Below, piece by piece: positions 23,678 through 64,000 of a stretch of DNA of 64,000 nt. Position numbers and translations under genes: made by a program. The first letter of the stretch is position 1. Every line of letters begins with the position of its first letter. The notes under the pieces were generated by a model. That model was not told where the DNA came from and searched no databases. It worked only from the letters and a program-made list of their open reading frames with translations. The DNA is from Mizuhopecten yessoensis (Eukaryota): NCBI RefSeq assembly GCF_002113885.1, contig NW_018408858.1, positions 457,796 through 521,795 on the forward strand. Reading direction: 5' to 3'.

Positions 23678-26600
23678 TTATTGGTCATCGGAGTCTGTAA
23701 CAGAAAAAAATAACCGAATTCAGCCGAAGTATAAATTCAGTTTCTATCATGATGTTTTTTATTTTTGAAGTAAAAAAAATGGTATTAACTTAAAAAAAAA
23801 GAAAACTTGCCTCTAAGTTAATTTTTGCAATATATTAAACTCTTAAATGAAGCTCATATCAGATTTATGTAACTAGTCCAGTTATACTGAATAGTGAATA
23901 TAAACGAATTCATAAATATATTATTTTATCACTTCATAAAGTATTTCTCTAACCATCATCATTGACTTTTCTTGTTTTAATTATGACGTCATCATTAAAA
24001 CACCTCTGACGTCATTATTGATAGTACAATTATATTATATTAATTGCATTTGAAAAATAGCATGGCCCTTTTCAAAGAATATGTGATACAACTGGATTTG
24101 GAAGTTATACTTCATAAAAAAATGAATCGTAAAAGAGCCAAATTTGCAAACAATAAAACGTATATCTTGACAACTACTCTCTGACACCAATTTCTGGCAA
24201 AAATATCATTATGTGTCTGTTGTCTGATCATTTCGTTTACGTACAATGTAATAAACGAGCGTGTATCAATTTATTCTACAACGGTGCTAATTATGTTTAC
24301 TTGATGGAGCCTATTTGTTGACTTAGGAATAGCTGCTTTTAAACTATTGCATACATCATCACAAAAACAACAATACATAAATACCGTCCACTTCGAAACA
24401 TTCAGTGTCTCCCCTCCCTGACATTCCTGCAAATCAAATATATATGTTTTAAACAATATGACAGGAAATTTTCAACCGACCCAACTAATGTGATTAACTA
24501 TTTTCGGGGTTTTTTCTGATAACAATTAATAATCACTACGGTGCTGACATACAACGAACAAAGTCACAAACAAATACCACTCGAAAATACTAACACTGGA
24601 ACTAGCGGGATTACATATAACAAAGTCCATTGCTAACTCAATACAAATGGTAGATAACACGAGGATTTTGTTAGCTCAATAACTTTGGCATAGTTATTGT
24701 AATATCGAGGCATAATGTTGTCGCACCAAATCTTAAACTTACCCATGTTTCTACAGCATTTCATTCCGCCATCTGTTAAGACATTTCAATTATATTACTA
24801 GTGAAATATAGTATAGTAAATTGCATAGTTAATTGTTATATTCCTTTTTTTTGTATAAAATAGCAGGAGAGAGTGAAAAGAATGAAAAATTATCTGGATA
24901 GCACAATTACAACCAGAAAGCAATACATCAGAGAATCAATACGCAGGTGGGCTACTGGAGATTTCCTTCCTGCAACAACCTGATCATATGACAACAGTTT
25001 CAAAATAATACGCAACATTAAACGGCAGGAACTGGAAAGACATCAAAGCACAAAGAAACAACACGAACTCCGTCAAAAATGAAAGGCAGAATCAGGTGGT
25101 GCTACAGAAAGTAAGCGTTTCGTCAACATGAAGAGACGCCGGTCATTACGTCTGCTGCTGATATTGTATACATCATATAAAACAATCATTTTTCAAACAC
25201 AGATATACCGGAACCAGACCCAGAGAAACAAGATTGTTTTATAATGAGTCACGCGTATTTCTTTTGACAGCGATTAAAGATAACATACATGTCATGGTAA
25301 TTTTAAACCTAACAACTGTTTGGGGCCGGAGGGGCGGGGACGAATAGTGAAAACATAGCAAATTCTTTAAACTCCTTCTTATTCAGTAGGAATGAAAGGA
25401 TTTGTTCCATGTTTGGTCTGAAGCATCCTTTGGTGAAGGGGAACCAATTTTGTATAAACCGTGGATCTGGCCCCCATGGGCCTGAGTGCGGGGCCAAAAG
25501 GGGGTAATAGGGCTATACTGATTTAAGCGACTTCTTCTCTGGAACTAAGAGATGGATATCAACCATATTTGACTGGAAGCATCCCTCAGTAGTGGAGATT
25601 CAAATTTGTACAAATGGTTGGGCTGAGCCCCAGGGGGCTGAGGGGCGGGGCCAAAAGGAGGCAATTTGGCTGTATTGCTACAAACGATTCTTGGAGATGG
25701 GGATTCAAAATTGTACAAATGGTTGGGGTGACCCCCCAGGGGGCTTAGGGGAGGGACCAAAAGAGGGCAAATTGTCCATATTGCTATAAACGACTTCTGT
25801 AGAATTATGCCATGGATATCGATCATATTTGGTCAGAAGCATTCATGGGAGGCAGGGATTCAAAATTGTACAAATGGTGGGGTTAATCGTTATTAACAGC
25901 CTATACCGATATATTTCGTCAACGATATCAAGCACGAGGTTGATCTTTGGATATCATTTAAACAATAACTGGTTGTCTGGATGTAATTATTGTTGATATA
26001 ATTACAAGTGGCCTCTGGCAAATCCCATAAAACCCGCTAGGGTTTATGGTAGATTTGCCAGAGGCCACTTGTAATTATAACAACAATAATTACATCCAGA
26101 CAACCAGGTATTTTTTATGTTGACAGATTTTTCTTTTTTAAGACATATTCCTACAAAAACCATTTGCCCTGCCTCAAAATACATTTCAGGCGGCCATTTT
26201 GTTTGTTTACATATTCCTACACCTGAAACAGGCAGCTGTAATTATAGTCGAGCAGTTGTAATTATAGCCTATGTAATTACACTTGCCCTCTAACACTGTT
26301 GTAATGGGACGGCGCGGGGGCAAATGTAAATATATAGAGATAAACAACAGCAAACTTTTCTCTTCATACTGTTTTAAAAAAAAAAATCAACTTCCGGTTT
26401 TCGGTACGGGTCAAAGTTCGAATGTGTAATTTTGTGAAACAAACTTCAAAAACCTTTTTCTCAATAACCAAGTGACCTAAGGTCATAATATTTATCGAAT
26501 ATTCATGCTCAAGCTGTGGACAATCAAGTTTCATAATATGAAAGACCTTGACCCATGTTCAAAGTCACTTGGGTCAATTATGTTAAAATCTTCAAAAGAC

Positions 26601-29600
26601 TCCTTAACGGAAATGCCCAGGGTATTGATATTTGGTCTGTAGCATGCGAGGTTGATGGGCAACAAGGTTTATGGATCAACTTCCGGTATTTGATAGAGGT
26701 CAAATTCGAACATGCAAATTTGTAACAAATTTCAAAGATTCCGGGACTTTTACTACTGGTGGAAGGGAAGTAACTCGTACTATTTACGAGTTACTTCCCT
26801 TCCACCAGTAGTAAAAGCCCTGGTAGAATTGTTCACCAACAAAATTATAACTTAGAGCAGAAGTTAAACACCTTTTTTATTCTACTATTTTGCTAAAATT
26901 CTGAACTTGATCAAGTTTCAACATTTCAAAATATAAAGTCTTTACCTCAATGGTGTGATATAAGTAAGCCCGTTAAATTGTTAGCCAGCAATTTCTAGTT
27001 GTACTTATGTTTATTTAATCTTTTTAGTGGAACTACTTTTCGCACCATTTTATGAGTCTTATGTGTTCAGTGATTGACTTGTTTTTATTTTGTAACAAAT
27101 ACCTAGTTTTCATACTTTCACTTTGTTGATAACAAAATAAATGATACTAAAACCTACCTTCTTTTGGCTTACACTCTACTTCTCCATCTGTAAAATAAAA
27201 TCAATTAAAACCATTATATCCTTATCATTTCAGGATGTCATCTTCGAAATTAAATGGCTTTATTCTCAATATATGCATCTTTTCTAATCTATGATTTTTT
27301 TATGTGTTAAAGGTGGCTAATTCATTTGTACATTCAAAACATGAAAAATAAAATGTATTTGTAATAAAAAAAAACAAAAACGAGTTCACTAGTCTAGAAA
27401 CAATTGCAGATTCATGCATACCTATGATATCAAAGCAATGTTTTGATTAAACATGAAACTGAATTGCATGGCAGCAAAAGGAATAAAAGCCGGCTTAGAT
27501 CTCAAAGTAGTACCGTCATAATTTTCATTGAACCGGTAAAACTATCTTTCTGCCTTGAGATTGGTCAGTTTTTGATATATGGAACCAATTTAATAGATAA
27601 TAATTCAAGGGGGCAAAACAAGGTATGTTAATCGATCAATAGAACGGAAGCCTTCAATAAAAGAAGGACTTATGTTAGCTCAGTCGGTTTCAATCTCACT
27701 TAACTCTCGTCTTGAAATTAGTGTCATATTCTCCATTTATGTTTAGAAATAATAACTAATTTTAGATAATTGACCTATTTAAATTAAAATTGTTGAAACA
27801 ACAAGAGAATACCGAACTGCCAACAAAACAATAATTCGATCTCGAAATCGATAAAACTATGGCGAAAAAATAATAAGAATAATACACGAAATGTCTTGAA
27901 AAAGTAGAAGGAGACTTACATCAGGTGTTTCGGAAGGTTAAGTGTAATCTGCTCAAACTACAACACCCGCCCTGTAAACCTATGTCAAATCTAAATAATG
28001 TCGCGTCCTGGGTAAAAACAAGGAAAACTGGGAAAGTACAACAAATCAACAAGGCTCACTTATGAGTATAATCAAAAGCAATCAATGTCATATCACACAA
28101 AGAAGGAGCCAATTCCCTTTTGAGATCATGATGGTGAGCTTAAAACTTTTCAATAGTCATCAGCTGATATTTAACGAAACCTTGTGCTGTAAGTTTTTCC
28201 GCCAGCAGTCGACAACTTTTACAAAAACATGATGTTCGGAGCAAACTAAAGAATTCCAAATCAACTGCGATATGTAAATACCGTAAGTAAGCGCGCAGGG
28301 GTGTTACTTTTCAGAAAGGGAAAGTTCGCTATCGGAAAGTCGAAACGAATTTGCTCATTGTACAGCTTAAAAGTAAGGCATCCCTGTTGGTCATGATGCA
28401 AGCAAAGATCGAGGAAAGAAGCTGACGACAAAGAGTCTGTCGTGTCATTGATTTCAAGCTAAAAAGGATATATTTTATTGATAAGTCAAGCAATATATTG
28501 TTATTCAAATACAGCACATCGTCGACATATCTATACTTGAAATTGAAGGACGTTGAAACGCTCCGTTTACTTGTCATGAAATGAGATATTTATTATTTCA
28601 TATTTTATATGTTGTTTTAGATATATAGGTGATATTTTCCATTTTTCACTTGCCATATTTTATACACTCACACTCTGTCTCCAACAATTTCTTCTCTATT
28701 TTCATTTTTGAATTATGTTTTGATATTAATAGTTGCAGAATACGTTCTGCCTCACAGCTGCCTCATGATTAATTTTGATCACAACATCTAACATTAAATG
28801 ACCTATCTAATTTAATTCTTAGCCTCTGAAATAATTCAAGAGGTCGTTCTAATTATTAACGCAAAATAGAAGCATACTTTCCCCCAATTTCGCTATATTA
28901 TCTAATTGTTCTGTATTCATAGTAAATATGAAGAAAACACATATTATTTCGAAAGAATTGAAGGATTTGCATGAATGAATTTCTGATAATTTCTTTAAAT
29001 CATGATTTCAAGTTCAACACAAAGGTTTTTTTATAGGCTTTGAAATTTGAAAACACTTAAGACCACTAAGGATTCCTTTTCAGAATCCATCTTTTCTCCA
29101 AAAGTTGAGTATTGAAAACATCTTGATATCTTATTTATTCAAGCCAGAAAACGAACTGGCGGACCTCTTTCGATATTTTGTGATTAATTTTCTATTGTAT
29201 AAAATATAGGCATTCTTTTAATGGAAAACAATGAAAAAACATCCTTTGGCGTATCGGATGGACCGTTTAAGTATTATTTTAGTAAAAAGTAGATAATCAC
29301 TTTCTTTTAACCGGTTATGTTAGCAAAGAAACTAACTTTTAACTGATATGTTTATATAAGCATCCATGCATTGTTTTGCTTCTCATCCTAATACAAACTA
29401 TAAATAATCTTTAAAATAGATAAATGCTATTTGAAATCTAATTTAATGTCTGAAACAAACTAAAAGGAGACTTTCATTTTGATCGAATATACTTGCAATT
29501 TTTAACACATAGTACTAACACACACGAGTTAAACATGGCGCATGTCGGAATCAGACAGGCTTACGTATCCCTTTGTGTACAATATTAAGGTGTGATCAAT

Positions 29601-32310
29601 GTACTATACATACGGATGTTGGCACAATCAAAATCTCCGTCGAGCACTTCAAGTTCACCAGGCAATAAGTCATCATATGGCATCTGATACCCACACAGAT
29701 ACACCATAAAGGATGCTTTCTCACTCCAATACCAGCTGAAGGAATCGACTACAATAGACACATGATTAATCAAGACACGCTTCGATCATTATACCACTTT
29801 CACATCCTCAGTCCCAGGTGCAAATCGCACTAACGCTTATTAAATTGTATGCGATTTCATCTGGGATTGAGGATACCGCTAATTCTAACATCTTAGGCAT
29901 GTAATCAACAATTTTATAAATAGTTCTCGGCTTGAGTTATTAGTTTTTTTTCAAACCTATTCACTATTAAATCAGTCAGTTCCTGCAATATCGGTTGCTA
30001 ATTTAATATAAGAGTATTGCTTAACTTGACAAGGAGATGTCATTGAGTAAAATTCTCAAAAAAAACAAATCTTTAAAATGCATGGAATTTTCTTTCAATA
30101 CACATATTTGCTTTACACCCTTGAAAGATAAACGTAAGACACATAAATGTGAATATGTCATGAAAAAAGTAAGCGAAAACTTGCCGATGTTACAAATACG
30201 TACATCAAAAATTTGACTGACTTTGATGGCGAGTGTCGCTACTCTGTAATCTTTAAATGATAGGTACCAGCCTAGCGATTGGTCTGTTTTTTATAACTGA
30301 AATACATACTGCCTTGGATTTTGTTATTACATGTTCAAGAGGTGTATGGATAGAGGAACCCTTGAAATTCGAGGATAGAATTCAAATAGAGAAAAACACC
30401 TTTTAACAATTCAATAAGACGGTGCAAAAACACAACATTGGTAATATGTACAATAATATCCAAATGGTCGTTTTGTTCGTTTAAGACTCATCAACGGTCT
30501 CAAAAAATCTATTTCTAGTGAGACTTTAACCAGAGGATTGGTTGTTGTTGAGAAGTGTTGACTCAGTTAGTCAATCGCCAACTATCGCTATCAACGCAGA
30601 GGTTAAAGTGAACAGAGATACTAAAGATTTTTCCTAATCAATATTTCGCGGTTTTAAACAAAATTTGTAATTATCAGAGGTTTATTTAGTGATTTTATAA
30701 CATGAAGCGTTAAATAGTTTCGTTTGATCTCGTTTTCATGAAAATAAATAGATCTAGAAAAATAATATTCAAATATATGTTAATGAGTTTATTGACTTAT
30801 TTCAATAGAAATATCATCCGGTTGACTTGTTACTTTTTCCAGTACCAGTATAAACATAACAAACGGTGGTGGGAACTGACATCCTCGAAGGACAGGTATC
30901 AGCCTAGCGATGGACCGGTTTCTTTTTACCTGAACCCCATCAAATAACTAAATGCGTGCCTTCATTTTTGTGATGACATAGTGAGCGTAACTGCTAGAAT
31001 TTCGATGATTGGAAACAGATTACATTTTAATTTGATATTTGCAAGCGAGGGCACAATAAACGATCAATTCAGATATCAAGTAGGTGATGCGTTTACTTAA
31101 TCAGGATGAAACAAAAGTGAGTTATGTTTTGTGTTGATATGGATTTACATGCACGCCAGTGGGGAAACATGTTTGAAATGTAAATCGGTGTTATTAAACA
31201 AAATTAAAGAAAAATTCGTCTGCAATGATTCAGCACCTTATATGCTTTTGTTACAATATAGATGGCAATTTAGTCAGATCTAACCTTAAGACTCACACGT
31301 GATGACGTAGTCTGTGCCGATATCCAACTGTACGCCACACATGGAGTCGAATGCTGCCGTGTGCAGATAAAGCACGTGTTTGCCTCCAATCCTTTCCAGT
31401 GCGGTCTGTAATAAAACGATCGTATTTTAGAGGAGAACACCATCAAAATTATTGTAATCAGTTAAAATGACTTCCTCAGTAATCCGTATTTATTTCACGT
31501 GAAATTGAATATTAATGATATTTTTTTCCTTATTGGTATACATCAGTGAACGTCTCTATCTTGCATATCAACAAACATAGACGTACCTCTGTTGCTTGAA
31601 TGACACTTGTGATCTCAAACGCATACAAAAATTGGTCATCAAATGGATCATCGCGTCGACGAGACAATAATGTCTGATTCAGGACCGTGCCTCTCACAAC
31701 TTGGATAACAAATTCACAGGAATTAAGTAACTGATCAATACCAAACATAACTAATCGAACTATGCATCATAAAAATCTGCAACGTGTTCCTTTTATCTTT
31801 GGAAAGTGACCTTTTTTTTTTTTTAAATACAATTTAATATCAAAGGCGAATACTTTTTAGTATCTTTTTGTGTTCATGAATGAATGATAATTTTTAAACA
31901 TCAAAACACTCAACAAAGATCTATCTGAAATTATGTGTATGCGACAAAAAATATTATCAACATAAAGAATAGAAACATCATCACTTAAATCTTTCCGAAA
32001 GATACTTTTAACAAAAAGACTAAAGCATCATAAAGTATGCTTGATAAATATTTTGTATCTAAAACTGGTAATACTCACATGAAATTTCATTTCTTATGAG
32101 TGATTTTTCCATTTACCAAGATGAAACAATTTGTCTATGGAATATAGAAATAACATGCAATGTTTATAAAGGTATTTTTATCTGTCGAGAATTAAACTTA
32201 TCTTCCTTGCAGTATTGATTGCGTAGGTTGCCGTTCAGACTGGAACATGAACAGGCTATACACTGCTCGATGCCTGTTATTGCCAAACACAGAACTATCA
32301 TCCACGACAT
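23678..32310 (-). CDS. TIMP/NTR-domain secreted protein (TIMP-B) with a micro-exon-encoded Cys-rich tail, about 197 aa; the first coding exon lacks a canonical donor, so possibly damaged
   Basis: Exons 32310-32193, 31699-31587, 31405-31297 and 29748-29614, then micro-exons 27187-27158, 24772-24743 and 24426-24385, and terminal exon 23694-23678. Translation: MSWMIVLCLAITGIEQCIA|CSCSSLNGNLRNQYCKEDKFIVRGTV...HTAAFDSMCGVQLDIGTDYVIT...YLCGYQMPYDDL...FDCANI-HGEVECKPKE-DGGMKCCRNM-GMSGRGDTECFEVD-DSDDQ*. Exons 2 and 3 (113 and 109 nt) are the same size as in TIMP-C. Confidence 0.75.
25300..25890 (+). mobile_element. HINE/Helentron-like core-repeat element (about 120-bp internal repeats) in a TIMP-B intron
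   Basis: Repeated GGGATTCAAAATTGTACAAATGGT...GGGGCCAAAAGG...AAACGACTTCTTCTCT units, GC-richer than the background. Confidence 0.6.
25964..26112. mobile_element. Palindromic (foldback) MITE-like element with about 70-bp arms
   Basis: CTGGTTGTCTGGATGTAATTATTGTTG...TAATTACAAGTGGCCTCTGGCAAATC pairs with GATTTGCCAGAGGCCACTTGTAATTATA...CAACAATAATTACATCCAGACAACCAG. Confidence 0.8.
26385..26740 (+). mobile_element. Second HINE-like core-repeat fragment
   Basis: TCAACTTCCGGT...GGTCAAA..TTCGAA..TG is duplicated at about 26388 and 26677, with a GTGACC/GGTCA-rich core typical of these elements. Confidence 0.5.
26741..26823. mobile_element. Perfect hairpin / internally deleted MITE: 33-bp arms, 5-nt loop
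   Basis: CTTTTACTACTGGTGGAAGGGAAGTAACTCGTA (26747-26779), loop CTATT, then the exact reverse complement (26785-26817). Confidence 0.85.
28100..28575 (-). mobile_element. Degenerate Penelope-like retroelement reverse transcriptase fragment
   Basis: SFNFKYRYVDDVLYLNN (RT catalytic YxDD in a Penelope-type context), followed across frameshifts by KLYN, NFPFLKSN and YGIYISQLI-like segments. Confidence 0.75.
29804..29874. repeat. Short inverted repeat / mini-MITE
   Basis: ATCCTCAGTCCCAGGTGCAAATCGCA ... TGCGATTTCATCTGGGATTGAGGAT, arms of about 25 bp. Confidence 0.7.
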
Positions 32311-38243: not shown

Positions 38244-41200
38244 ATGGGATGGATATTGCTCGCCCTGGTATTTGTGGCAGCTGTCAGTTTTGACCACAGT
38301 GAAGGCTGTTCTTGCGCGGGACTCAACGACCTTGCGTTTCAGTACTGTAACGACGAAAAGGAGTTGAGTACGTATCTATAATAACGTTTAGCACTACAGT
38401 CGACTTTAATTTCATTGTGGATTTGCCATAGTATTATTATTCCGGCATTGTAGCTTCGGTTTTAATATTTTTCTATTAGTAGTAAACAATAGTACATGTA
38501 TATATGTAATAAATATAACATCAGTATCGCCTACGTAGATAATTGTTACTTCACGAATACTAGGACCCGAATTCATAAAACTGTTCTCATGCTGACTCTC
38601 ATATACTGTGCTCAAACCCGATTCCTTGTCTCTTCCTTATGGAAGAAATTCGGAGAGAATTAAAGACTTAACTGTTCTAAATATTTATTTTATTGAGTGA
38701 TGTAAAAAGAAAAAAGTATATTTCGTGAATGGGGAGAACGAATAAATATATGATATCAAAGTTTCAGTCGGTCTTGACACGTTGAGACATGTTTAGTACG
38801 TATATTGTTTAGATATAAAGTACAATTTTGATATTACAGATATCCGATTTGAGTGAAGTGATTAGATATATAATTTTCAAATACACTTATATGACTTGCG
38901 AAAGTGTATTACTATAAGGAGGCTACAAAATTCTCATTAATGTAAAGTAAAAAGTATTACATATCGTAACATGATTTTTTTGTGATACCACCAGTAACTA
39001 ACACCAGACAGTATATTTACTTGCCATTCTCCATATCAAACATTTGAAGAACACCAATAGCAACGTTAGGGACGTAGAAATACTTATTCAAAATAATCAG
39101 TTTCAGTTTCATAACATATGACGGTGTGTATTGTACCTTCTTGCAAGCTCTACATCTAAAACTGCTTCATGTCTCTGGTACAATTCTGTGTTATATATTA
39201 CCTACTTCCGAATATTGACGATGCTTGTGTTAACGGATAAATATGCCTACATTTTGTATGTTCAACGTCCTGTTTACCAAAGACGTCTTCAGTGTAGAAA
39301 CAAGTCTATCAAATGTAAACAATGTCAACCTTAACGTAGACAGAATTTTAATTGTTCCCCTTTATTTCCTTTCAAAGCGATTCTTGCCTGGAATTACTCA
39401 GAATACAACAACAGACCTTTTCCTCAGATTCACCTTTTTACTAGACACCTTAATATTGCCGTGCACGAAGATGTGATGATAAGTAAGATGTTTATCCTAA
39501 AGTTTGTACTTTATTATTTGTCACTTTGTTTCCGTTAGTCCTTCGTGGTGTAGCCCTGAACGAAACACTAGATGATGGCGAAACTATCCAGACCTGGGAT
39601 GACGTCAGCAGTTATGCATTTTGGATAACGGAAGTCGTCAAAGCTACAGGGGTAAGTTCATTACCTTACAGGTATAACTCTTCAACTCCCCTCTCAAAAC
39701 TAACTCTCTCGTCTGCTAATATACAGAGTATTTAAGGTCATAGTCAAATGATTTTGTTGTGGTTTCGAGTCGTTTCGTGATTCATGAAAGAAAATGAAAA
39801 GTATTTTTGCAAATTGAATATAAACAGATTGCTGATCAAATAAGACTGCGTTAATTTGAAACACAGATGCTCATTAGTATTGCCCGGAAGTGAATTTTGT
39901 GAAAATAGGGAGGAGGATTCCTATAAAGTTTGCCGTGTGGTAGGAACGCAAGATACCAAAAAGTTATATTTGTGAAAGCATTATCAATGGTAAATTCTTA
40001 TTTTATCTTTTCTTAATGTAAATAATATAAAACTAACTACTCTAAGACATGCACGTTGCATTTTAATATTATTTTGTGATCTGAGTAAGAATGTCGTGGA
40101 TGGTTTCATTTGATTAAATTCAGAATGCCAGTAGATTAATTGAAGGAAAGAACGTCATCAACATTCAAGCGGGTATGGAAGGTTCCATGTGCGGTACCAG
40201 TTTAACAATTGGCGTGGAGTACGTTATTGTATGTGAGTACTCTAAAAAAAAAAAAACATAAGCATTTTAAATATAAGTAGTCTACTAGTTGATGCGAAAA
40301 CAAAAGGTTCTTGTGGCATTATCGCTTAACCGTTTCTATCCGACCTATGCAAGAACATGTTTCCAATAATTTAAGGACGCCGGAGGCTCTCTCATATTTC
40401 TTAATGATCCTCATTTGTAGACCTTCTAGTCTTGAGGTACATCAAGCACGGAGCACAGAGACGGACACAGACTAGCAACTTAAGGGAATATCTCCCAACC
40501 ATTTCTGGTTAAAACTCTCATTACAATCCCTGTCAGTCATCATACTGCTGAATCATTAAAGAGTTTCATTGCGAGTGTTTTGTAATTACAGTTACCCCCC
40601 CNNNNNNNNNNNNNNNNCACCCCCCACCCCTGCGCGTTTAGCACCTGTTTACCACTCTAAATGTGAAAAAGTTCTTTCTTTTAGATATGAAAGTCTGTTG
40701 TTGGTATATCTTAAATAAGTGGCCTCTGTTGCTGGGGGTTTTCCGTGATATTGTTCCACATTATGATGAATGTACTTGCTTCGATGTCGTACATTTCTTG
40801 TGCTATCTTGACTGTTTCGAAATATCCGCGCGGTGTCATCTTTATGCTTTTGTAGGTAGATTCAGGTTTTTAGTCTTTCTTGGTAGGACAGATTTCATAA
40901 TCCAGGAAGCTGTTTGGAGGTTCTTCTTTGTACCCCTTCTATTTTGTATGTACATTGCTTGACATGGAGACCATTATGAACATGAAAAATCTAGATGTGT
41001 TCGTACCAGACTCTTATACAGTGTTTGAAGTTTCTTTTGATGACTGCAGACAATGCGTTTGCCTTTCTGATTTGTTACACATATATGATAACTCATAAAT
41101 AAATAAATTTATGATGTCAATAATGACTTTTTGAGGATGTGCACATGCTTATTATTCACCTTAAATGACTATAAAAACATTTTAAAAGTCTAAGAAAAAC

Positions 41201-44200
41201 TGGTCAGTAGAAGTAGATGGTTATGTCGTACTACAGGTATATAAACAAAGATAATGTCCACTTTTTCTTTTTCTTTTTTACTGTTCCCGGTCAATTGTTA
41301 TCACAAGCACGAAAACAGTATCAATGACATATTCCAGGGGTGTACAGAGCGAAATTGAGCGTAACCCCTGGATATCGAGGATGCCAGTAATGATATTGAT
41401 AATGAAATAGACGTATCAGTAAACTTGCAGCTGAAATGTACTTTATTTCATACTTATTTTTTTTTTTTTATCTCATCCATATGTTTAGTGCACGAGTCCT
41501 TAAGGATTTCCTTGTGCGACTGGGTAGTGCCTTATGATGAACTGCAACCCTGGGATCGAGAAGTGGTTGATGATGAACACTTCAACTGCATTATTAGAAG
41601 TATGTATCAGAAATAGAAAATCAATCTTCCTTTGATCTATTCAGTCTATTGACTTTTATTTAAACTTCAAACAGTCATTCTATTGACGTTTATGATTTTT
41701 TTATCATTAATGTATCTCAAGTTCACGGTTAAATTACTGTGCAAATTAGTTCGGTGAATTTTGACATATTGTTAAAAGCAAGAGTATCGTCTCTAACATA
41801 TCAAAAAAGGCCATGGCATAAACTCTAGGAAATGCATTTTGTAGAAAATTTAACCTAGCTGTATTACATAACAGCTTTTAATTCTCCTCGACAGTTTTCA
41901 TGATTCGAAATTCATTAATTATATTTGCATTTTTTGTTTGCAGACTGCATTCCTATGGGAGGTATGTAAAAAAATATACAGGCTATTTTCAATGGAAGTT
42001 ATGTACAAACTCTGTATCTACTGACTGTGTTTCTATGGGAAGTATGTATTTACAATTTTTTATATACAGACTGTTTTTCTATGGAAAGTTTGTGTACACA
42101 AACCTTTATGTACAGGCTGATTTTCTATGGGAAGTATGCATTTACAAACTTTTATATACAGACTGTTTTTGTTTCCGAAGTATGCTCAATCTTTTTTTAT
42201 CTACCGGGTTTTTTTCTATAAGAAGTATGTACAAACGTTTTTTTACTGTTTTTCTATGGAAAGAATGTATTAGAAATTTTAATATATATACTGTTTTTCT
42301 ATGGAAAGTTTGTATTTACAAATTTTATACACAGACTGTATTTCTATGGGAAGAATGTATTTACAAACTTTTATATACAGACTGTTTTTTAGGAAAGTAT
42401 ATACGAAATTCCATATTCCTGTTTTCTTTTGGAAGTATGTATTTACAATTTTTTATATACAGACTGTTTTTCTATGGAAAGTTTGTGTACACAAACCTTT
42501 ATATACAGACTGTTTTTCTATGGGAAGTATGTATTTACAAACTTTTATAAACAGGCTTTTCTTCTATGGGAAGTATGTACAAACTTTTATTTAATGTTTT
42601 TTTATATAAGAAATATTTACAATTTTTCTATACACAAATGTATTTTTTTATGAAAGGTATGTACACACTTAATGATTTATATAGGTTTTGTGTTCTGTGA
42701 GAAATATGAACAAACTTTTTATACGTAGACTATTACTTTATACGTGTTTCTATGGGTGGTAGTATATACAAGCCTTCGATAGAAATGACGTCGCTCCTTT
42801 TATCAGAGAAGGGAATTAGGCATCTAACAATTATAAATATAAAAGTTGTATCAGATATGCAGATAAACAAATATAGAGTCAAAGTAATTTCCAATTCAAT
42901 TGTCAGTGATCAATTCACGTCGTCATTTTATTTTAAACGTGAATGGTTTTTAATATTCATTCAACCCTTGACCTCAATTTTGTTCATTTATTTTTCAAAG
43001 ACGGTTTGGACATATAAAAATGCCGCCATAATAAAGTTAGTTCTTCTTCCGACATAACTCATCTTTATTTATTTATGAGTTAATAAATAAAGTAAAATTG
43101 TTAACTTATTGCATGAACATTTTTGTAATCCCCAGATATGGAGCTGATGTGCTGTAATGAGGGTAAGTAATAAATATAATTAAAAAGTATATTTAATGTC
43201 AGATTAATATCGTTATGGAAACATTCCTTTTAATATATATTGATGGTGACACTTCATTTTCACTATATTGGAGTCTAGAGAACATAACAGGAGAATTACA
43301 TAATGGAAGCCACTAACTAACTATCATAATGTCTACAGTTAATTAGAAAATTAATAATCCATCCCGCCAACAACTTCCGTTTTAACAATAAAATATGCTT
43401 TTTTACCCTTTACTTACAGATCAAAGTGGAACAGTTACCTGTACCAGCTACGAAGGTATATATCATTTCCGAAGAAAACAACTATCGATACCAGTCCTAA
43501 TTTGTAACAGAATACTGATATTTTTATTTATAACTTTACATATATATATCAACACTTGTGTGACCGCACAACGCACCAAAAATAGCGTACGCACATTGTG
43601 CATACATCGTGCACACATCGTCCGCACACCGCACATCGTGTAACGTTGTGCGATCCCACAACTGCAAATATTGTATGGACAGAGAGATCACTTATAAAAG
43701 GAATGCTAAGAGAATGTTGCATTTGATAATTATGATTGTGGAATGGCTTTCAGATGTAATACTTAGTATGTCTTTTATAAATTTGTCTTTCGAGATGTTA
43801 CGTGGATATTGCTTTTGTCATTGTTCAATATTTTTAAAACCTGGGTCAACTTCAGAAAACAGAAACTGTCTTCAAAAGGTCGTCTCGTCCCAATAGAAAT
43901 GAAATTGATGTCAAAATCAAACAGTCGATCACATACAGTCTTCTTTTACAGGTTATAATTAAAATCATATTCTCAATTGAGTTTTTAAAATGTCTGTTTT
44001 ACAGATTGTGTTACGGACCAAGGTATGTATTCGTACAGAAACATAATATCTATTAAATATAAATTTTACTTATTTTACAACAATTATGAAACAAGTTATT
44101 ATATCTTATGTTAATATCTATTATTAGTTATATAAAAGCGTACGTGTCAACAAATTTAATTGATATGAATATAACCTGTATATTACCACAAAATCTGTAC

Positions 44201-45682
44201 GTCACTGGAAAAAAAATATTTAAGCTATTAATAGTATGATTCGCTTAAAATTCTATATTTCGCTAAAGCAATTCCAAATTCGTATAGATATAGGCCTTTT
44301 TTAGTCAGCCTCCGCAATAATGTCACAGTCGATTCTCGTGTTCTCTACATCAATCCCATGAATGTGCCCACTTTATCAATCAGTCCTAGTTTAACGTAAA
44401 AAGTCATGGCGATCCTGTTTATGTACTTGTTTTCTTTGCCAACTTCTATTTTGAAGGTGGGGTATATAAAATTTCATTTTGGTTAAACGCTGTGGTGTAT
44501 TTCGGCTTAATTCATTGACGCTGTGGTATATAACGTCATTGTGTGTTGACGTGTAGCGCAATCTGCACTTGCGCTTTGTGGTTGTAGATTTTTTCTAATA
44601 TTAAATGTAAACCTATACACGCTCTAGTCATCATGAAAACAGGGTCCTTTTTGTAATGTATTCAATAAATACAATTTTCTGATATTACAATGACCTTCTA
44701 TGACTATGTAAACCTGAAACAAACTTTACGTACAACTACTCAAATGTAACACATTCGATTGTTTCTTTGTAATGACAATCATAGACCGTACCGTTAATTT
44801 GTAATAATTATGAATTACGTTTTACATTATCAGTTGAAGAGACGACCCATTGCTGTACAGCATGTAAGTAACGCCAATTTTAACAAATCAGAACAAAAAT
44901 ATCTTTATTCTTTTCTTTAAGTCCTATTTCTACATTTACTATATATTTCTTTTGTTTCTACACGATGCTGATATAAATTGAGTAGCACTTCATCGTATTG
45001 TCATTGTTTCTGATACAGACATTTCTGCTGGTTTTAGTATAAATGATGACCAACTGTAAAACACGTGTAGCTGCCATGTTGCAAAATTATTCTTTTCTTT
45101 TACAGCAAACGAAGTGCCGAACGCATGTGTGGACTATCCAGGTATTGAATATCTCTATTTTTAATATAAACATATACATACATGATCAAAAAATGATTCT
45201 GTAATAGATATGTCAAAATGAATGCTAAAACTTCTTGCAATTTGTTTCTACAAGTACTCATAAAGTAGCTACTGATGTGAAGCATAGTGTTATTCTCAGT
45301 TTTTAGTCTTTCAAAATAGTTCCGCGAACATAACTCATCAATATAAACAATCGCCATAAAATTAAGATTACTCAGGTAACTTATAGAAAACAGTGAATGA
45401 AACAATGAACTTTGAGTTGTATTTCCAAAAATAGTTGGTTATCAATGGCGTTAGAGATTAATGACGTCACTGACCTAATTTATCTTACCTATATATTCCT
45501 ATAATATCTTCTTAATCATTAATTGCATTGAAGAAGTACTGCACTAGAGATAATGTTATACGTATGGGTAAAGATTGTAAGACATTTCACCGGTAAAGAA
45601 GTTCATACCATCGTACTAGTACACATAGCGCAAATATTTTATCTTTTATGGTTTCTTTACAGGTTATTTAAAGAAAAAGTAA
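38244..45682 (+). CDS. TIMP/NTR-domain secreted protein (TIMP-C) with two micro-exon-encoded Cys modules, 11 coding exons, 213 aa
   Basis: Exons 38244-38367, 39539-39651, 40124-40232 and 41489-41599; micro-exons 41944-41961, 43136-43162, 43420-43455, 44005-44022, 44834-44863 and 45106-45141; terminal exon 45663-45682. All are GT-AG and in frame (642 nt). Translation: MGWILLALVFVAAVSFDHSEG|CSCAGLNDLAFQYCNDEKELILRGVA...GSMCGTSLTIGVEYVIV...SLCDW...FNCIIR-NCIPMG-DMELMCCNE-DQSGTVTCTSYE-DCVTDQ-VEETTHCCTA-SNEVPNACVDYP-GYLKKK*. Confidence 0.85.
41935..42770 (+). repeat. 46-bp degenerate tandem array made of copies of TIMP-C micro-exon 5 plus its splice sites
   Basis: Unit (tatatacag)ACTGTTTTTCTATGGGAA(gtatgtatttacaaactt) versus the original cag-ACTGCATTCCTATGGGAG-gtatgt. 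Period 46 (42070/42116/42162 and 42463/42509/42555). Confidence 0.88.
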
Positions 45683-47950
45683 ACAAAAGAATCAATACGA
45701 CATTTGGTACAAAAGAAGTGCAGCTGTTGTCGATTTTTGTATATTGGTGATGACACCTAATACACTGATGCTATTTGGTTGTACATCGACAATAAAGGTT
45801 ATCAAATATTTTATCTTTTACAGTTACAGTATCAATTGCTCGGTAAATTCTTACGTCAAAGTGTCGATATCTGTATCAGATAGTTTTCTTATAGATTCGG
45901 TTTTAATTAACATTGTTTCATAAATAACATCACTAATGTGAAAAAAGATGGATCAATTCACCGTTTCCTTTTGGGAGAAATTACATTTTTGTTGCAAATG
46001 AAGTGCAATGATACAAAATGAAAAAGAATATTCTGTCACAGTAAATTAACATTCATGATCAGGATGAGGACAATACATATCTTTTCAAATAAGGTTTCGT
46101 GTATATGTTTCACTGTTTCAAATAATAGTTCTGGACTTTTCTTTGAATCAAAGATAAAATTTAATAATTTAAACTTTACATAGGCCATTTCTAAGCAGCT
46201 GACGTAAAGTTGACATTTTCAACCAACACGCCTCAGTTCATTCGTGACCTCGAGTGTTGTTAGCGTGGTGTGAAACACATGTCGCCGTAGTTCGAAAATA
46301 GCGTGGGATACACTTACTAAAGTCTAACAGAGGATGAAAGGGACAATCACGTGTCCCTCACACAGCTTTTAACAAAAAGGTATTAGAATGAATATGAAGC
46401 GTATCAGAACTCAATAATATTACCGCACATATCGTTCTCTGTGGAAACAAAGCTTCAAAATAGCTTCAGTTTACATCAAACTGTTGTATATTTTGTATCA
46501 TTTCAAATGCATACACATAATAATTACTTTAACAAGGACAATCAGGCCGAATTGCTCCGTCATATCATAGGCAAATGTTACATGTATAATAGGACAAATT
46601 TAAAAGTCACGGGAGGGAGTTGAGTTAGGAGTTAAACCACATCTATTCGTGCACTGGTATTTATATTTAGGGAAAAAAAATCTAATTCACGGTGGTTTTC
46701 CTCCGCGTAGTCAGGTAATCTTCTTTAAAGCTAGGGTTTAAAGAATTATTGATAATAGGACGATTATTCAACTGCATATACATAAATGAAATATCGCGCC
46801 ACGGAAGCATCCTTCTCTTCGGATTGATAAAATAGTAGTTGACTTGATATTTCACTCCCGTGCAAGGGTTGGCAGCTAGGTCGACTGATCTACTATAACG
46901 ACGAGCTACTCTTGCTGAAGGAATCTGAATGTATCTGCTGCCAAATTCCAGCACTACAGATTTAATTTCGTCTACTCCTTCCAGTAGGGTCTCCTAGCTG
47001 TAACTAGGAGGTTAGTGTGACACTGTTTCAGTAATGGTCGTTCCATGTCACCATGGTAATAACATAACGATGTTTTATCGTTCAATTGACCGTATTAAAT
47101 TACTTGAAAAAGAACAGCGAACATGGTTCCGTCGTTACTCGCTTTAAATGTCACAAACATTATATAAATAAACGCAGGCTCCTCCATTTGTAAATCATGT
47201 ATATGTGCTGACATTTATTTAAATTACATTATTATCAACCTTAAGGGTGTTATCAATTCCCTTCAACTGAACTAGTAGGCGGTACATAGCGGAGATGTGT
47301 GGTAGTATAACAACAGATGCGTACAAACAAATATGAAATTATAGGGCTTTATCCCACTCTGATAAAGCCTCTGGAAAATGGTCTCTAAAGTTTAGATTGG
47401 AGTTAGATTTTTATGCAAGTGTAACGTTTAATTGCTTGACTGATCAGGGTCGTTTGATTGTACATGGGCTACAAGAGGTATCAAGGAATGAGTGAGTAGG
47501 GTCACAAGTGTTCCTATAGAGGCAGTGGATGAGTTTTGAAGACAACTATTAGAAATCTTGGGTAGGTAATGAGTATCAAGGGAGATAAATCCAACAGGTC
47601 ATAAAAGACATTTTGTACATGTACATTCTATAACTATCAAGCGTGGCTTTTGAAATATATGGAGACATATCATACACATAAGATAGCCAGGGTAGGCAAT
47701 GGCAAACAAGGGATATATATGAAACATGACTACCTAGACAATTTGTGTATGCTATTGGTATCAACTGAGGCTTTTGAAATCAATGGAGACATATCATAAA
47801 AATTGACTAGATACACTAGGTATACTATTGGTGTCAAATCAGAACTACCTTACATTACTAGCTATAGTCTCGTTCAACAAGAAACCTGTCATACATGTAC
47901 ATGTATTGGGCTACATATTATAAATCATAAAAGTTTCGTATTTGTATAAG

Positions 47951-48488: not shown

Positions 48489-51129
48489 TCAGGAATCACA
48501 ACTAGCCGAAACACTTTTTTCAAAAAGTAGAATGTGAGCAACTGCAATTATCAGAAAACATATTTTTCCGATGATATAGTGGCACAAGGACCACATGTCT
48601 AATCTCGGAGGCATTTTCTTTATACCGATGAAGCCATTATCTTTCGTTTTCCGGACTGTTTATCCCTCTTCTTTTCCGGTGGTGATATTAGACGTCGGTA
48701 CATTGATAGCCATGATGACGGAGTCTACAGTGATCAAACTGCTACTGGCCATTACCATCATGAAATACATTACTGAAACATATGATACATTATTAACGCC
48801 ATGTTATCATACAAAGAAATGAAGCAACATATGCTGTATTCCATGCATTATACACATACAGTCAAGTCTAGAGTGTAAACATATACAATATATACTAGCG
48901 TCTAAAAATATACACTAGTGTATATACACAGAGTATACACATCAGTGTAAACGAATACAGTAAACGAAACAGTGTAAACACATACAGTTAACATAAAAGT
49001 ATAGACACATACAGTATACATACCAGTGTAAACACATATTACAGTAACACCACACTGTTAACGCATACCGTTTACATGTCAGAGTAGAACATACAGTATA
49101 CAGGTAGATGTTAACACATTCAGTATACATACCAGTGTAAACACACACTATATACACTACAGTGTAAACACATACAATATACACTACAGTGTAAACACAC
49201 ACAGTATACACCACAGTGTTAACAATTAAATTATACACTACAGTGTAAACACACACGGTATACCATACAGTGTAAACACACACGGTATACCATACAGTGT
49301 AAACACACACAGAATATACCATACAGTGTAAACACACACGGTATACCATACAGTGTAAACACACACGGTATACCATACAGTGTAAACACACACAGTATAT
49401 ACCATACAGTGCAAACACACACAGTATATACCATACAGTGCAAACACACACGGTATACCATACAGTGTAAACACACACAGTATATACCATACAGTGCAAA
49501 CACACACAGTATACCATACAGTAAAAATACCGTTTACACTACAATGTTAACACAAACTGTATACACACAAGTATAAACACTTGCATTATAAATGCCATTG
49601 TAAACACATAATGAATATCCGCCAATGTTTACATAAACAGTATACCCGAAAGTGTAAACACATTCAGTATACACCATATAGTGTAAACATAAATAATATA
49701 TTCTACAGTGTCGGCAAACAACACAGGTCACACAACAGGTTTAAAAAGTGACATGGAAAAAGAAAATTAAAAATTAAGATTATACCAAAACTTATCGAAA
49801 AAGAAATGTACAAAGATCCCAAATAAATAGATAAATGAAAATCTATCAATGTATCATGAGGACATCCTGGGGGTTTGTAAGTCACCTTAATATAATGTTT
49901 ATCAAATTCAACTCATTACCTTTATATTAAAGTTTTCATGAACAACAAAGTTTTAAAACAGCATATAAGGAAACAAGAAATATAACTCCATACATGATAG
50001 AAATAAGACCAGTCATGCATGGTTATAAAAACATGCGAAAGTAAAAACAAAAATGTATATTTAATTCAAATTTGAAATAAAATAAATTTAAAATTACCTT
50101 TCATGGCACAAACGAACTTGCAACGTGAATTTCTTTCTTTTAGTAATACAAGATTGGACCTGTTCTTTTTTCACAACAGAGCGCACTACAATATGAAAAC
50201 GTGGAATTCTTCGACACCGTTTGGTATCGGAAAGGTTTGAGGTGCTGAAAACAAACAACCGACTATGACACAACACATACATGTACCTCAAATATATCGA
50301 TAAATGGATTATTTATTGATCTCAAACCACCTTTACTTTCACCAACAGCTGCTACAATCCGTCAGTAAAGTCCTCGGTTTTCAATCTTTTCAACCATAAT
50401 GTATGCCATTGGAGTGAATTATCAACAAAAAGAGTCGGCCTGGAAATCTTCTAAAACAAGGATGATTTTTTCCGTTTTCGGTCCGGATCAGAACGGCTTA
50501 AAATTTGAACTCCACGTTTTCATAAAGCAGTGCACTCTGGCCCAACACCAGACATCTTTCTGTCGAAATGTCTTAGTCTGGTGTCGGGGCCAGAAGATAC
50601 TCGAGCTAGAATCATAAGTATTTTACCTATTATTGGTGTAACGTCTGAGTTTGTTGGAAGATGTTTCTCCATCTGAGTGAGAAATACCATACACGCGAGT
50701 AGTATAGTCATCCGACCGCCTTCCTCCGTCGGTATAGAGTACACACCCACAGTTACAACAGGCAGAATTACTGAAGGAACAACTATAAGGAACACATAGA
50801 CATCGTTTTTCGTCTCAGTACAATTTTGAAATTCAAACCTGGGCCAGCATTCTCATCCGGAGTTTCCAAAGACGTCGACACCAAGCTCTATGATTGACTT
50901 CCATGGACGGGAAATGTGATTCTGATTTCATCAGGGACTTAAAACTTGATGTAATTATTTGATTTGGGACCGAGGTTCATTCTTATATTGCATGTCTGAT
51001 TGTCATAGGGGGAGGTTTGTGGATTCATATCACAGGAAATGGTTATTACTCCGGACGGCGAAAAGGTCACGAGACCATCTGACGTAATTTGATATATATC
51101 ATAAAGGATCAGAAAATGTGATTAATCCC
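48489..51129 (-). pseudogene. Pseudogene of a nicotinic acetylcholine receptor-like (Cys-loop) subunit, paralogue of 62334-63492
   Basis: Exons about 51129-50627 and 48772-48489 align with the intact paralogue (CDMNPQTSPYDNQTC, LPTNSDVTPIIG, EKSVSASCDS*). They carry in-frame stops at 50939-50941, 50888-50890 and 48660-48662, an FPYD>SPYD change and a 12-nt deletion at the M2 entry. Upstream exons were not identified. Confidence 0.88.
48850..49720. repeat. About 27-bp minisatellite (TACAGTGTAAACACACACGGTATACCA) in the intron of the nAChR-like pseudogene
   Basis: Clear units at 49240-49520 with degenerate flanks. Source of the repetitive CVYTV/CLHCMV ORFs. Confidence 0.9.
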
Positions 51130-63492: not shown

Positions 63493-64000
63493 CTGTGAAT
63501 TATAAAATGGTTACACCTGACAAGACGACCCGCGATAGAAGACTAAAACATCTGATTAATATCATATATTTACATTTGCATGGCATTGTCACTATATAGC
63601 CTCTTTGAAAGCTGTGTCGTTGATGGGACTTTAATTACCATGCATCACGAGACACAATTCTTAGCGTATTAAAACAACACTGACCGGAACTACAATAGCC
63701 AATATTAATAAACATGACGGCTGCTGAAATATCGCTGGGCATTGTGAGATTTGACAATGTCATTGTAAATTTACGTGCAAAATAAAAAATAAAATAAAAA
63801 AAAACACTTTTATTACAACGAAAACAAGACCAATGTCTGCAATATCGTACAAAATGCACATCGGTTGAAATCACCAATGCCGGCAATGGAAACAATTTTA
63901 ACACTCATGCAATTTATCAGAAATATCGTCTGTCACACTGCACTGATCAACAGGGTTCGTGACAAATGTCTGAAATACACATATTCTATAGACCTACTGA

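What the first reader, a model, noticed from the sequence alone, without database searches (positions are those of the whole stretch)
41944..45682. TIMP C-terminal domain replaced by duplicated C-x9/10-CC-x9-C modules, each encoded by a triad of symmetric phase-1 micro-exons
Seen in sequence: after the NTR domain, TIMP-C has six canonical GT-AG micro-exons of 18, 27, 36, 18, 30 and 36 nt. All are multiples of 3 and all are phase 1-1. They encode one C, CC, one C, then the same again: CIPMGDMELMCCNEDQSGTVTC and CVTDQVEETTHCCTASNEVPNAC. Established knowledge: classical TIMPs have a C-terminal domain encoded by ordinary exons, as TIMP-A here does with a phase-0 junction. Inference: this is a distinct NTR plus micro-exon Cys-module architecture that I do not recognise. 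Any exon can be skipped without a frameshift, giving combinatorial disulfide variants. Automated gene callers would probably miss these exons.
Basis: partly seen in the sequence, partly recalled or inferred. Interest (0 to 1): 0.85.

Follow-up and report, generated by a model that had tools for sequence, protein, structure and literature searches.

The report
Scallop TIMP with micro-exon cysteine tail
A scallop gene of the TIMP protease-inhibitor family really does build its 61-residue, 8-cysteine C-terminal tail from six conserved 18-36-nt exons, but the gene is already correctly annotated in RefSeq and nothing shows the exons are shuffled by alternative splicing.

Summary
The window is Mizuhopecten yessoensis. 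Four ordinary exons (38244-41599) encode a signal peptide and a TIMP-type NTR domain. Six GT-AG, phase 1-1 micro-exons of 18/27/36/18/30/36 nt plus a 20-nt terminal piece then encode an 8-Cys tail.

The spliced product is letter for letter RefSeq XP_021376532.1 (LOC110465194, "uncharacterized protein"), so automated callers did not miss it. The Ylistrum balloti orthologue keeps identical micro-exon sizes, all splice sites and all 8 Cys, while its introns are unalignable. Tail dN/dS is about 0.36.

The neighbouring paralogue TIMP-B and its Pecten maximus orthologue carry one module on 30/30/42-nt micro-exons with matching intron positions. TIMP-C's tail therefore looks like a tandem duplication of a three-exon cassette.

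The tail matches no Pfam family and shows no significant similarity to canonical scallop TIMP C-domains. Its preceding intron lies 1 nt from the canonical position. Replacement versus in-situ divergence is therefore unresolved.

There is no evidence for combinatorial exon skipping. The 46-bp array of micro-exon-1 copies is mostly decayed and is absent in Ylistrum.

Verdict: a real, conserved, unusual gene architecture; a new variant of a known family; moderate interest. Scan notes s1-507890 and s1-508004 cover the same window.

The parts
38244..38367 (+). TIMP-C (LOC110465194) exon 1: start codon, hydrophobic signal-like N-terminus, Cys-Ser-Cys start of the NTR domain; ends in phase 1
   Evidence: Exact mapping of P0001 on the window; sequence read
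39539..39651 (+). TIMP-C exon 2 (NTR domain); ends in phase 0
   Evidence: 44% identical to the TIMP-B exon
40124..40232 (+). TIMP-C exon 3 (NTR domain, Cys70-equivalent 'SMCG'); ends in phase 1
41489..41599 (+). TIMP-C exon 4: last two NTR cysteines; 111 nt, phase 1-1; ends 3 residues + 1 nt after the last NTR Cys
   Evidence: (Pfam TIMP profile 99-126)
41944..41961 (+). micro-exon m1, 18 nt, phase 1-1, one Cys (CIPMG)
   Evidence: 83% identical to the Ylistrum exon, blastn E 8.5e-6
42000..42579 (+). 46-bp minisatellite in intron m1-m2 made of copies of m1 plus its splice sites; mostly decayed
   Evidence: TRF: period 46, 13 copies. Only 3 of 11 extra copies keep AG + 18 nt + GT + Cys codon. 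Absent from the Ylistrum intron
43136..43162 (+). micro-exon m2, 27 nt, phase 1-1, Cys-Cys
43420..43455 (+). micro-exon m3, 36 nt, phase 1-1, one Cys; end of module 1
44005..44022 (+). micro-exon m4, 18 nt, phase 1-1, one Cys; start of module 2
44834..44863 (+). micro-exon m5, 30 nt, phase 1-1, Cys-Cys
45106..45141 (+). micro-exon m6, 36 nt, phase 1-1, one Cys; end of module 2
45663..45682 (+). coding start of the terminal exon (GYLKKK + TAA stop)
27158..27187 (-). TIMP-B (LOC110465155) micro-exon 1, 30 nt, phase 1-1, one Cys
   Evidence: same size in Pecten maximus
24743..24772 (-). TIMP-B micro-exon 2, 30 nt, phase 1-1, Cys-Cys
24385..24426 (-). TIMP-B micro-exon 3, 42 nt, phase 1-1, one Cys
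23678..23694 (-). TIMP-B terminal coding piece (DSDDQ + stop)
29614..29748 (-). TIMP-B exon 4 (last two NTR Cys); ends in phase 1, 3 residues + 1 nt after the Cys, as in TIMP-C

Best explanation
LOC110465194 of Mizuhopecten yessoensis is a scallop-lineage member of the expanded bivalve TIMP family. Exons 1-4 encode a signal-like N-terminus and an NTR domain. That domain has the N-terminal Cys-Ser-Cys and all six NTR cysteines, so it probably binds metalloproteinases the way TIMPs do (inferred). Where canonical TIMP genes have one ordinary last exon for the C-domain, this gene has a 61-residue tail with 8 Cys. The tail consists of two tandem copies of a 4-Cys module (C-x9-CC-x9-C and C-x10-CC-x9-C). 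Each module is encoded by three symmetric phase-1 micro-exons carrying 1, 2 and 1 Cys. The neighbouring head-to-head paralogue (LOC110465155, 'TIMP-B') has the same module once, with introns at matching positions. The two-module tail therefore most likely arose by tandem duplication of the three-exon cassette before Mizuhopecten and Ylistrum split. TIMP-B has only these four Cys after its NTR domain, which implies that each module is a self-contained two-disulfide mini-domain (inferred). The exons are most likely spliced constitutively. The tail is a small, selectively maintained, disulfide-stabilised C-terminal domain that takes the place, and perhaps the partner-binding or matrix-anchoring role, of the TIMP C-domain. 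Whether it descends from that domain is not resolved.
For: The spliced product is identical to RefSeq XP_021376532.1. Pfam TIMP PF00965 scores 35.2 bits against a 23.1 cut-off. TIMP-2 N-domains align over residues 22-145 with Cys1, Cys3 and the 'CG' and 'LCD' cysteines in register. The Ylistrum balloti orthologue has the same 18/27/36/18/30/36 exon sizes, all AG/GT sites and 8/8 Cys, with introns at about 50% identity, i.e. unalignable. Tail dN/dS is 0.36 over 54 whole codons, computed exon by exon. The TIMP-B module has intron positions matching TIMP-C: Cys + 4 residues + split codon, then 4 residues + CC. It is kept at 30/30/42 nt in Pecten maximus. Module 1 versus module 2 similarity beyond the Cys framework is significant in Ylistrum: 14 of 2000 Cys-preserving shuffles reach the observed score. 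The locus is demonstrably prone to such duplications: Pecten maximus has a 3.0-kb tandem duplication, 96-99% identical, of the whole micro-exon triad of TIMP-B.
Against: No transcript reads or cDNA were available here, so RefSeq models remain predictions. Module 1 versus module 2 similarity is not significant in M. yessoensis itself (1473 of 2000 shuffles), so the duplication rests largely on exon structure. Both structure predictions were of low confidence (pLDDT 42 and 52), so fold and disulfide pairing are unknown. The Ylistrum orthologue does not reach any Pfam TIMP hit, which shows how diverged the family is. No inhibitory or binding function was tested.
Confidence: 0.7

Rival explanations
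1. The tail is the ancestral TIMP C-terminal domain, strongly diverged and split by newly gained introns, not a replacement. In this reading TIMP-B kept the first four C-domain cysteines and TIMP-C re-expanded.
For: The intron before the tail lies 3 residues + 1 nt after the last NTR Cys. Canonical paralogues of the same genome (L016-L019 and TIMP-A) have their intron exactly 3 residues after it. Canonical scallop TIMPs of contig C5296 also have 8 Cys after the last NTR Cys, and their last exon starts G-acidic-x-x-C-x9-C-x-C, which by eye resembles the start of the TIMP-B module. The Pfam TIMP envelope on P0001 runs to residue 192, profile position 173. Protein-language-model features of residues 150-213 are nearest to TIMP clusters at 0.75-0.80, which is only a lead.
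Against: hhalign of the tail alignment against the canonical last-exon alignment finds nothing (probability 0.15). BLASTP finds no alignment at E <= 100. Cys-preserving shuffles give p = 0.06-0.84. The tail alone hits no Pfam family, and the TIMP hits of TIMP-B and its Pecten orthologue stop at profile position 118. The intron phase differs (1 versus 0). Three intron gains within about 39 codons would be needed.
Confidence: 0.3
2. The symmetric micro-exons, and possibly the m1 copies in the 46-bp array, are used for regulated exon skipping or mutually exclusive choice. That would give a set of secreted TIMP variants with different cysteine content, as in schistosome micro-exon genes.
For: All six exons and exon 4 are phase 1-1, so any can be dropped in frame. 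Three array copies (42070, 42463, 42509) still have AG + 18 nt + GT and a Cys codon. Schistosome MEGs show that such architectures can generate variation (PMC10526429).
Against: The three RefSeq accessions for this gene (XP_021376532.1, XP_021376534.1, XP_021376535.1) all carry this one protein sequence. The Pecten TIMP-B isoforms differ only upstream. Eight of the 11 array copies have lost AG or GT, lack the Cys codon or carry a stop. The array is absent in Ylistrum. Exon sizes and all Cys are conserved, as expected for constitutive exons. Dropping one 1-Cys exon leaves an unpaired Cys.
Confidence: 0.1
3. The micro-exons are a gene-model artefact or belong to a decaying pseudogene tail.
For: Only predicted models were seen, with no transcript data. 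The older annotation produced a different, frame-shifted product from the same exons.
Against: Lengths, splice sites, frame and all Cys are conserved across genera against saturated introns, with dN/dS 0.36. The paralogue and its Pecten orthologue conserve the same structure.
Confidence: 0.03

Closest known systems
Canonical TIMPs (Pfam PF00965; vertebrate TIMP-1 to -4 and the expanded bivalve TIMP repertoire described in PMC10755359 and PMC5975577)
   Same: Secreted protein. N-terminal Cys-x-Cys. Six-Cys NTR domain that aligns to TIMP-2 N-domains. An intron at nearly the same place after the last NTR Cys. Member of a tandem, lineage-expanded cluster in a pteriomorph bivalve.
   Different: There is no detectable canonical C-domain. 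The Cys pattern is C-x9-CC-x9-C, present twice, instead of the six C-domain Cys. The gene has 11 coding exons, whereas molluscan TIMP genes are reported with 4-6 exons, 132 of 142 having five (PMC10755359). The junction phase is 1 instead of 0.
Sbp8-1, the atypical 14-Cys TIMP of scallop (Chlamys farreri) byssus (PMC5975577)
   Same: A scallop TIMP-family protein with 14 Cys in total and a divergent C-terminal region. It shows that scallop TIMP paralogues can lose inhibitory activity and serve as disulfide cross-linkers.
   Different: Sbp8-1 is described as 12 canonical Cys plus two extra free Cys. Its C-terminal residues, read from the published mutagenesis primers, do not resemble this tail. 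It is Lys-rich and basic, whereas this tail is acidic. It is not an orthologue.
Schistosoma micro-exon genes (MEGs; PMC10526429)
   Same: Secreted products encoded by runs of very short symmetric exons separated by much longer introns.
   Different: There is no sequence relationship. Here only the C-terminal tail is built from micro-exons, and it is attached to a classical domain. The exons are cysteine modules conserved between genera. No alternative splicing has been shown.
Twin Cx9C (CHCH) proteins such as PET191 (Pfam PF10203)
   Same: Four Cx9C/Cx10C spacings. A weak Pfam hit to Pet191_N (E 0.13, 13 bits).
   Different: The hit is far below the cut-off of 24.4 bits. CHCH proteins are mitochondrial intermembrane-space proteins, and a loop separates their two Cx9C helices. 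Here the two motifs abut as CC in a secreted protein.

Membership tests
TIMP (PF00965) / NTR-domain metalloproteinase inhibitors | Profile match above the curated cut-off | tested here: met
   P0001 scores 35.2 bits against 23.1, residues 21-192. The TIMP-B orthologue P0006 scores 32.5 bits. The Ylistrum orthologue P0005 gives no hit.
TIMP (PF00965) / NTR-domain metalloproteinase inhibitors | N-terminal Cys-x-Cys directly after the signal peptide, plus six NTR cysteines in register | tested here: met
   The alignment to TIMP-2 chains starts at Cys22-Ser-Cys24 = residues 1-3 of the mature inhibitor and covers 22-145. Six Cys lie before the tail. The signal-peptide cleavage site itself is inferred, not computed.
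TIMP (PF00965) / NTR-domain metalloproteinase inhibitors | Canonical C-terminal domain with six Cys (three disulfides) | tested here: not met
   PDB TIMP alignments end at residue 145. The tail alone hits no family. There is no profile or BLAST similarity to canonical scallop last exons.
TIMP (PF00965) / NTR-domain metalloproteinase inhibitors | Inhibition of metalloproteinases | not testable with these tools
   This needs recombinant protein and enzyme assays. Sbp8-1 shows that scallop TIMP paralogues may lack activity (PMC5975577).
Micro-exon genes in the schistosome sense | Most of the coding sequence is in symmetric micro-exons | tested here: not met
   Only 165 of 642 coding nt (six exons) are micro-exons. 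Exons 1-4 are 109-124 nt.
Micro-exon genes in the schistosome sense | Protein variation by alternative splicing of the micro-exons | tested here: inconclusive
   Database isoforms show no tail variants. No transcript reads were available.
Twin Cx9C / CHCH | Profile match and a helix-loop-helix with two Cx9C pairs | tested here: not met
   Pet191_N scores 13 bits against a 24.4 cut-off. Low-confidence models show strands rather than a helical hairpin.

The most novel reading that the evidence does not exclude
The three-micro-exon, 4-Cys cassette is a scallop-specific, exon-shuffled mini-domain that replaced the TIMP C-domain. It is still expanding by tandem duplication: one copy in TIMP-B, two in TIMP-C, and a fresh 3-kb duplicate in Pecten maximus. 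Its symmetric exons, and some surviving m1 array copies, are alternatively used to produce secreted TIMP variants with different disulfide or free-thiol content. That would be a mollusc counterpart of schistosome micro-exon gene variation.
Probability: 0.1. Interest if true: 0.75.

Novelty: new variant of a known kind. Interest (0 to 1): 0.42.

Why it matters
The TIMP C-domain determines partner specificity, for example pro-MMP binding, and its origin is still debated (PMC4860685). This locus is a conserved natural case in which that position is occupied by a small modular cysteine tail with a very unusual exon structure. The same locus shows a one-module paralogue, a two-module paralogue and a recent 3-kb duplication of the cassette in another species. 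Together these make a compact example of how symmetric phase-1 exon cassettes multiply. For annotation, it shows that the published range of 4-6 exons for molluscan TIMP genes is not the whole picture. It also shows that older scallop gene models can read such exons in the wrong frame.

Tried and rejected
1. Own-genome DNA search with 41400-45750 found only a dispersed intronic repeat and no second copy of the tail.

2. Own-genome protein searches with exon 4 and with P0001 found only TIMP-B and the gene itself.

3. A genome-wide pattern for the CC micro-exon gave 15 hits against 11 for the control. Apart from the two known exons, the hits I read through (C170, C5435, C76722) are either not multiples of 3 or carry a stop. 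The result is at chance level.

4. The three word-based homologue searches found only four relatives, all pectinid. That method needs shared 5-mers and has a length window, so absence outside scallops is not shown.

5. AlphaFold2 on the 4-sequence alignment (pLDDT 42) and on the tail alone (pLDDT 52) was too poor for a fold search, so none was run.

6. ESM Atlas structure neighbours of the tail all have TM <= 0.5 and are unrelated.

7. Homology of the tail to canonical last exons was tested with hhalign, BLASTP and shuffling, all negative.

8. Sbp8-1 was considered as an orthologue and rejected from its published primer-encoded C-terminus.

9. The RGD in TIMP-B's third micro-exon is not conserved in Pecten (RGP), so it was not pursued.

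10. Accession and locus names occur in no searchable paper or in the held supplements of PMC10755359.

The full-length protein used was the database's own record, found with exon 4 alone. TIMP-B exons were entered as separate rows. Codon statistics were computed exon by exon on whole codons.

12. The N runs (8551-8809, 36219, 40602-40617) were left as they are. No contig looked human.
Full report
**What is there**

The window is eukaryotic, AT-rich DNA. Its assembly has 987.6 Mb in 82,659 contigs. The proteins it encodes are recorded as Mizuhopecten yessoensis, the Yesso scallop.

- e1 38244-38367
- e2 39539-39651
- e3 40124-40232
- e4 41489-41599

The six micro-exons are:
- m1 41944-41961 (18 nt)
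- m2 43136-43162 (27 nt)
- m3 43420-43455 (36 nt)
- m4 44005-44022 (18 nt)
- m5 44834-44863 (30 nt)
- m6 45106-45141 (36 nt)

A terminal coding piece at 45663-45682 follows. Every intron is GT-AG. Exon 4 ends in phase 1 and all micro-exons are multiples of three, so all are phase 1-1. They carry 1, 2, 1, 1, 2 and 1 cysteines.

**Is it real**

I searched with exon 4 alone, by reference. It returned a single 213-aa protein, P0001. It is RefSeq XP_021376532.1, XP_021376534.1 and XP_021376535.1, 'uncharacterized protein LOC110465194'. The claim that automated callers would miss the exons is therefore wrong.

The older genome-paper model KP79_PYT11765 (P0002, 162 aa) uses an alternative exon-3 donor. 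It skips exon 4 and m2 and reads m1 and m3-m6 in the wrong frame. The exons were recognised there too, but mistranslated.

Independent support comes from comparison between species. Searching with it retrieved three further records:
- the Ylistrum balloti orthologue (P0005, XP_060082216.1, 55% identical)
- the M. yessoensis TIMP-B model (P0004, LOC110465155)
- its Pecten maximus orthologue (P0003 and P0006, LOC117331811)

P0005 maps onto its genomic locus L028 with micro-exons of exactly 18/27/36/18/30/36 nt. All have AG/GT sites and all eight tail cysteines are kept. Sixty-nucleotide intron flanks are only 44-60% identical, which is the level of unrelated AT-rich DNA.

In a sensitive 8 kb x 8 kb blastn, all seven hits with E <= 0.001 are collinear exon-to-exon matches: e1-e4, m1, m4 and m5. 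No intron aligns. Computed exon by exon on whole codons, the tail has dN 0.39, dS 1.09 and dN/dS 0.36. These are coding exons under purifying selection.

No transcript reads could be examined with these tools. Expression therefore rests on the RefSeq models.

**What the protein is**

Pfam assigns P0001 to TIMP (PF00965) at 35.2 bits against a cut-off of 23.1. Solved TIMP-2 N-domains align from Cys22-Ser-Cys24, which corresponds to mature residues 1-3, through residue 145. The 'CG' and 'LCD' cysteines are in register. The protein has six cysteines before the tail and eight in it.

The N-terminus is hydrophobic, with small residues at positions -3 and -1 before Cys22. This suggests a signal peptide that exposes Cys1, as TIMPs require. 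That is an inference, not a computation.

**The tail**

The tail, residues 153-213, has the pattern C-x9-CC-x9-C-x5-C-x10-CC-x9-C. On its own it matches no Pfam family. The best match is a meaningless 13-bit hit to the twin-Cx9C family Pet191_N.

The neighbouring head-to-head paralogue TIMP-B, on the minus strand, ends in one such module, C-x9-CC-x12-C. It is encoded by micro-exons of 30, 30 and 42 nt at 27187-27158, 24772-24743 and 24426-24385, plus a 17-nt terminal piece.

Intron positions match TIMP-C. The first intron lies after Cys + 4 residues, in a split codon. The second exon then carries 4 residues + CC. Pecten maximus keeps 30/30/42, one of them with a GC donor. This confirms scan note s1-508004.

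TIMP-B has only these four Cys after its NTR domain. A module is therefore probably a self-contained two-disulfide unit (inference).

Three things indicate that TIMP-C's tail is a tandem duplication of the three-exon cassette:
- The exon sizes repeat: 18/27/36 against 18/30/36.
- The phases are identical, and the Cys content is 1/2/1 in both triads.
- The Ylistrum modules share an 'EC-x-DY' motif. Their similarity exceeds Cys-preserving shuffles, with only 14 of 2000 reaching the observed score.

In M. yessoensis the residual similarity is not significant (1473 of 2000). The duplication predates the Mizuhopecten-Ylistrum split.

**Replaced or diverged?**

Canonical TIMP genes elsewhere in this genome (loci L016-L019), and TIMP-A in the window (exon 4 near 6375-6220, last exon near 4310-4106, minus strand), share one layout. 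Exon 4 ends exactly three residues after the last NTR Cys, in phase 0. A single ordinary last exon of 50-64 codons follows.

TIMP-B and TIMP-C end exon 4 three residues plus one nucleotide after that Cys, in phase 1. The intron is thus essentially in the ancestral place, but what follows differs.

Three tests found no similarity between the tails and canonical last exons:
- profile-profile comparison
- BLASTP
- Cys-preserving shuffles, p 0.06-0.84

Some weak signals keep the in-situ-divergence reading alive. The starts look alike by eye (G-acidic-x-x-C ... C(x)C). The C5296-cluster TIMPs have the same count of eight post-NTR Cys. The Pfam envelope runs long. The language-model neighbours are TIMPs at 0.75-0.80.

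The changed intron phase, and the fact that the cassette is a 1-1 symmetric unit, favour acquisition of a new cassette. I rate replacement somewhat more likely than divergence, but the question is unresolved. Both AlphaFold2 runs were of low confidence, so no fold comparison was possible.

**Alternative splicing**

Nothing supports combinatorial skipping:
- One protein is recorded under the three RefSeq accessions for this gene.
- The Pecten TIMP-B isoforms differ only at the 5' end.
- Sizes and cysteines are conserved, as expected for constitutive exons.

The 46-bp minisatellite at 42000-42579 does consist of copies of m1 with its splice sites (scan note s1-507890). However, only 3 of the 11 extra copies keep AG, 18 nt, GT and a Cys codon. 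The array is also absent from the orthologous Ylistrum intron. It looks like a decaying, lineage-specific array, not a maintained cassette.

A comparable array occurs in Pecten maximus. There, about 32 copies of the 3' end of exon 3 plus the intron start sit in intron 3 of the TIMP-C orthologue. A 3.0-kb tandem duplication, 96-99% identical, covers the whole TIMP-B micro-exon triad. The locus is therefore prone to local tandem duplication, which is the mechanism proposed for the two-module tail.

**Comparison with what is known**

Bivalve TIMP families are known to be greatly expanded (PMC10755359, PMC5975577). Molluscan TIMP genes are reported to have 4-6 exons, 132 of 142 having five (PMC10755359). 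This gene has 11 coding exons.

[quoted passage not shown] It is a functional precedent for non-inhibitory, disulfide-active scallop TIMPs. Its C-terminus differs, so it is not an orthologue.

Schistosome micro-exon genes share the symmetric micro-exon idea (PMC10526429). They are otherwise unrelated.

I found no paper naming these loci.

**Verdict**

The architecture is real, conserved and unusual. It sits in an already annotated but uncharacterised member of a known family, so it is a new variant of a known kind. The claims about missed annotation and combinatorial variants do not stand on present evidence. Interest is moderate.

Noticed in passing
L029:14230-16522 and L029:17210-19512 (Pecten maximus LR736844.1): A roughly 3.0-kb tandem duplication, 96-99% identical, of the whole 3' part of the TIMP-B orthologue: the end of exon 4, the three micro-exons and the terminal exon. 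The second copy lies beyond the annotated gene end.
   Followed up: partly
L029 minus strand, about positions 4530-2150 (rc coordinates 5470-7850): Intron 3 of the Pecten maximus TIMP-C orthologue holds about 32 tandem copies (71-76 nt) of the 3' end of exon 3 plus the intron start. It is a second, independent exon-boundary minisatellite in this gene.
   Followed up: partly
L029:15715-15744: The Cys-Cys micro-exon of Pecten maximus TIMP-B uses a GC donor (GCAAGT) instead of GT.
   Followed up: no
window 32197-32310 (-) and 31587-31748 (-): The RefSeq model of TIMP-B (P0004, 174 aa) starts inside the exon-2 ORF and has no signal peptide or Cys-Ser-Cys. An intact exon-1-like ORF (signal + CSC) lies upstream, but the phase-1 GT donor present in Pecten is missing. 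Only a phase-2 donor paired with an alternative acceptor would stay in frame. The gene may be decaying or mis-modelled.
   Followed up: partly
window 43505-43685: A dispersed repeat of about 80-125 bp lies in intron m3-m4. More than 60 copies at 79-98% identity sit on many contigs of the genome, often as pairs 0.7-0.9 kb apart, which suggests the termini of a mobile element.
   Followed up: no
window 13491-13682 (-), about 6220-6375 (-), about 4106-4310 (-): TIMP-A is a canonical TIMP paralogue. Its exon 1 has CFCPESHPQTDFC. Exon 4 ends DCSCY in phase 0. An ordinary 64-codon last exon carries five Cys.
   Followed up: partly
window 50523-50852 (-) and 62787-63542 (-); L028:19144-20638 (-): Cys-loop receptor (Neur_chan) genes lie downstream of TIMP-C in both M. 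yessoensis and Ylistrum. The head-to-head TIMP-B/TIMP-C pair is also kept in Pecten, so synteny is conserved across three scallop genera.
   Followed up: no
window 16000-22000 and 48900-49750: Long, strongly GC-skewed tandem repeat tracts produce spurious Cys-rich ORFs on both strands.
   Followed up: no
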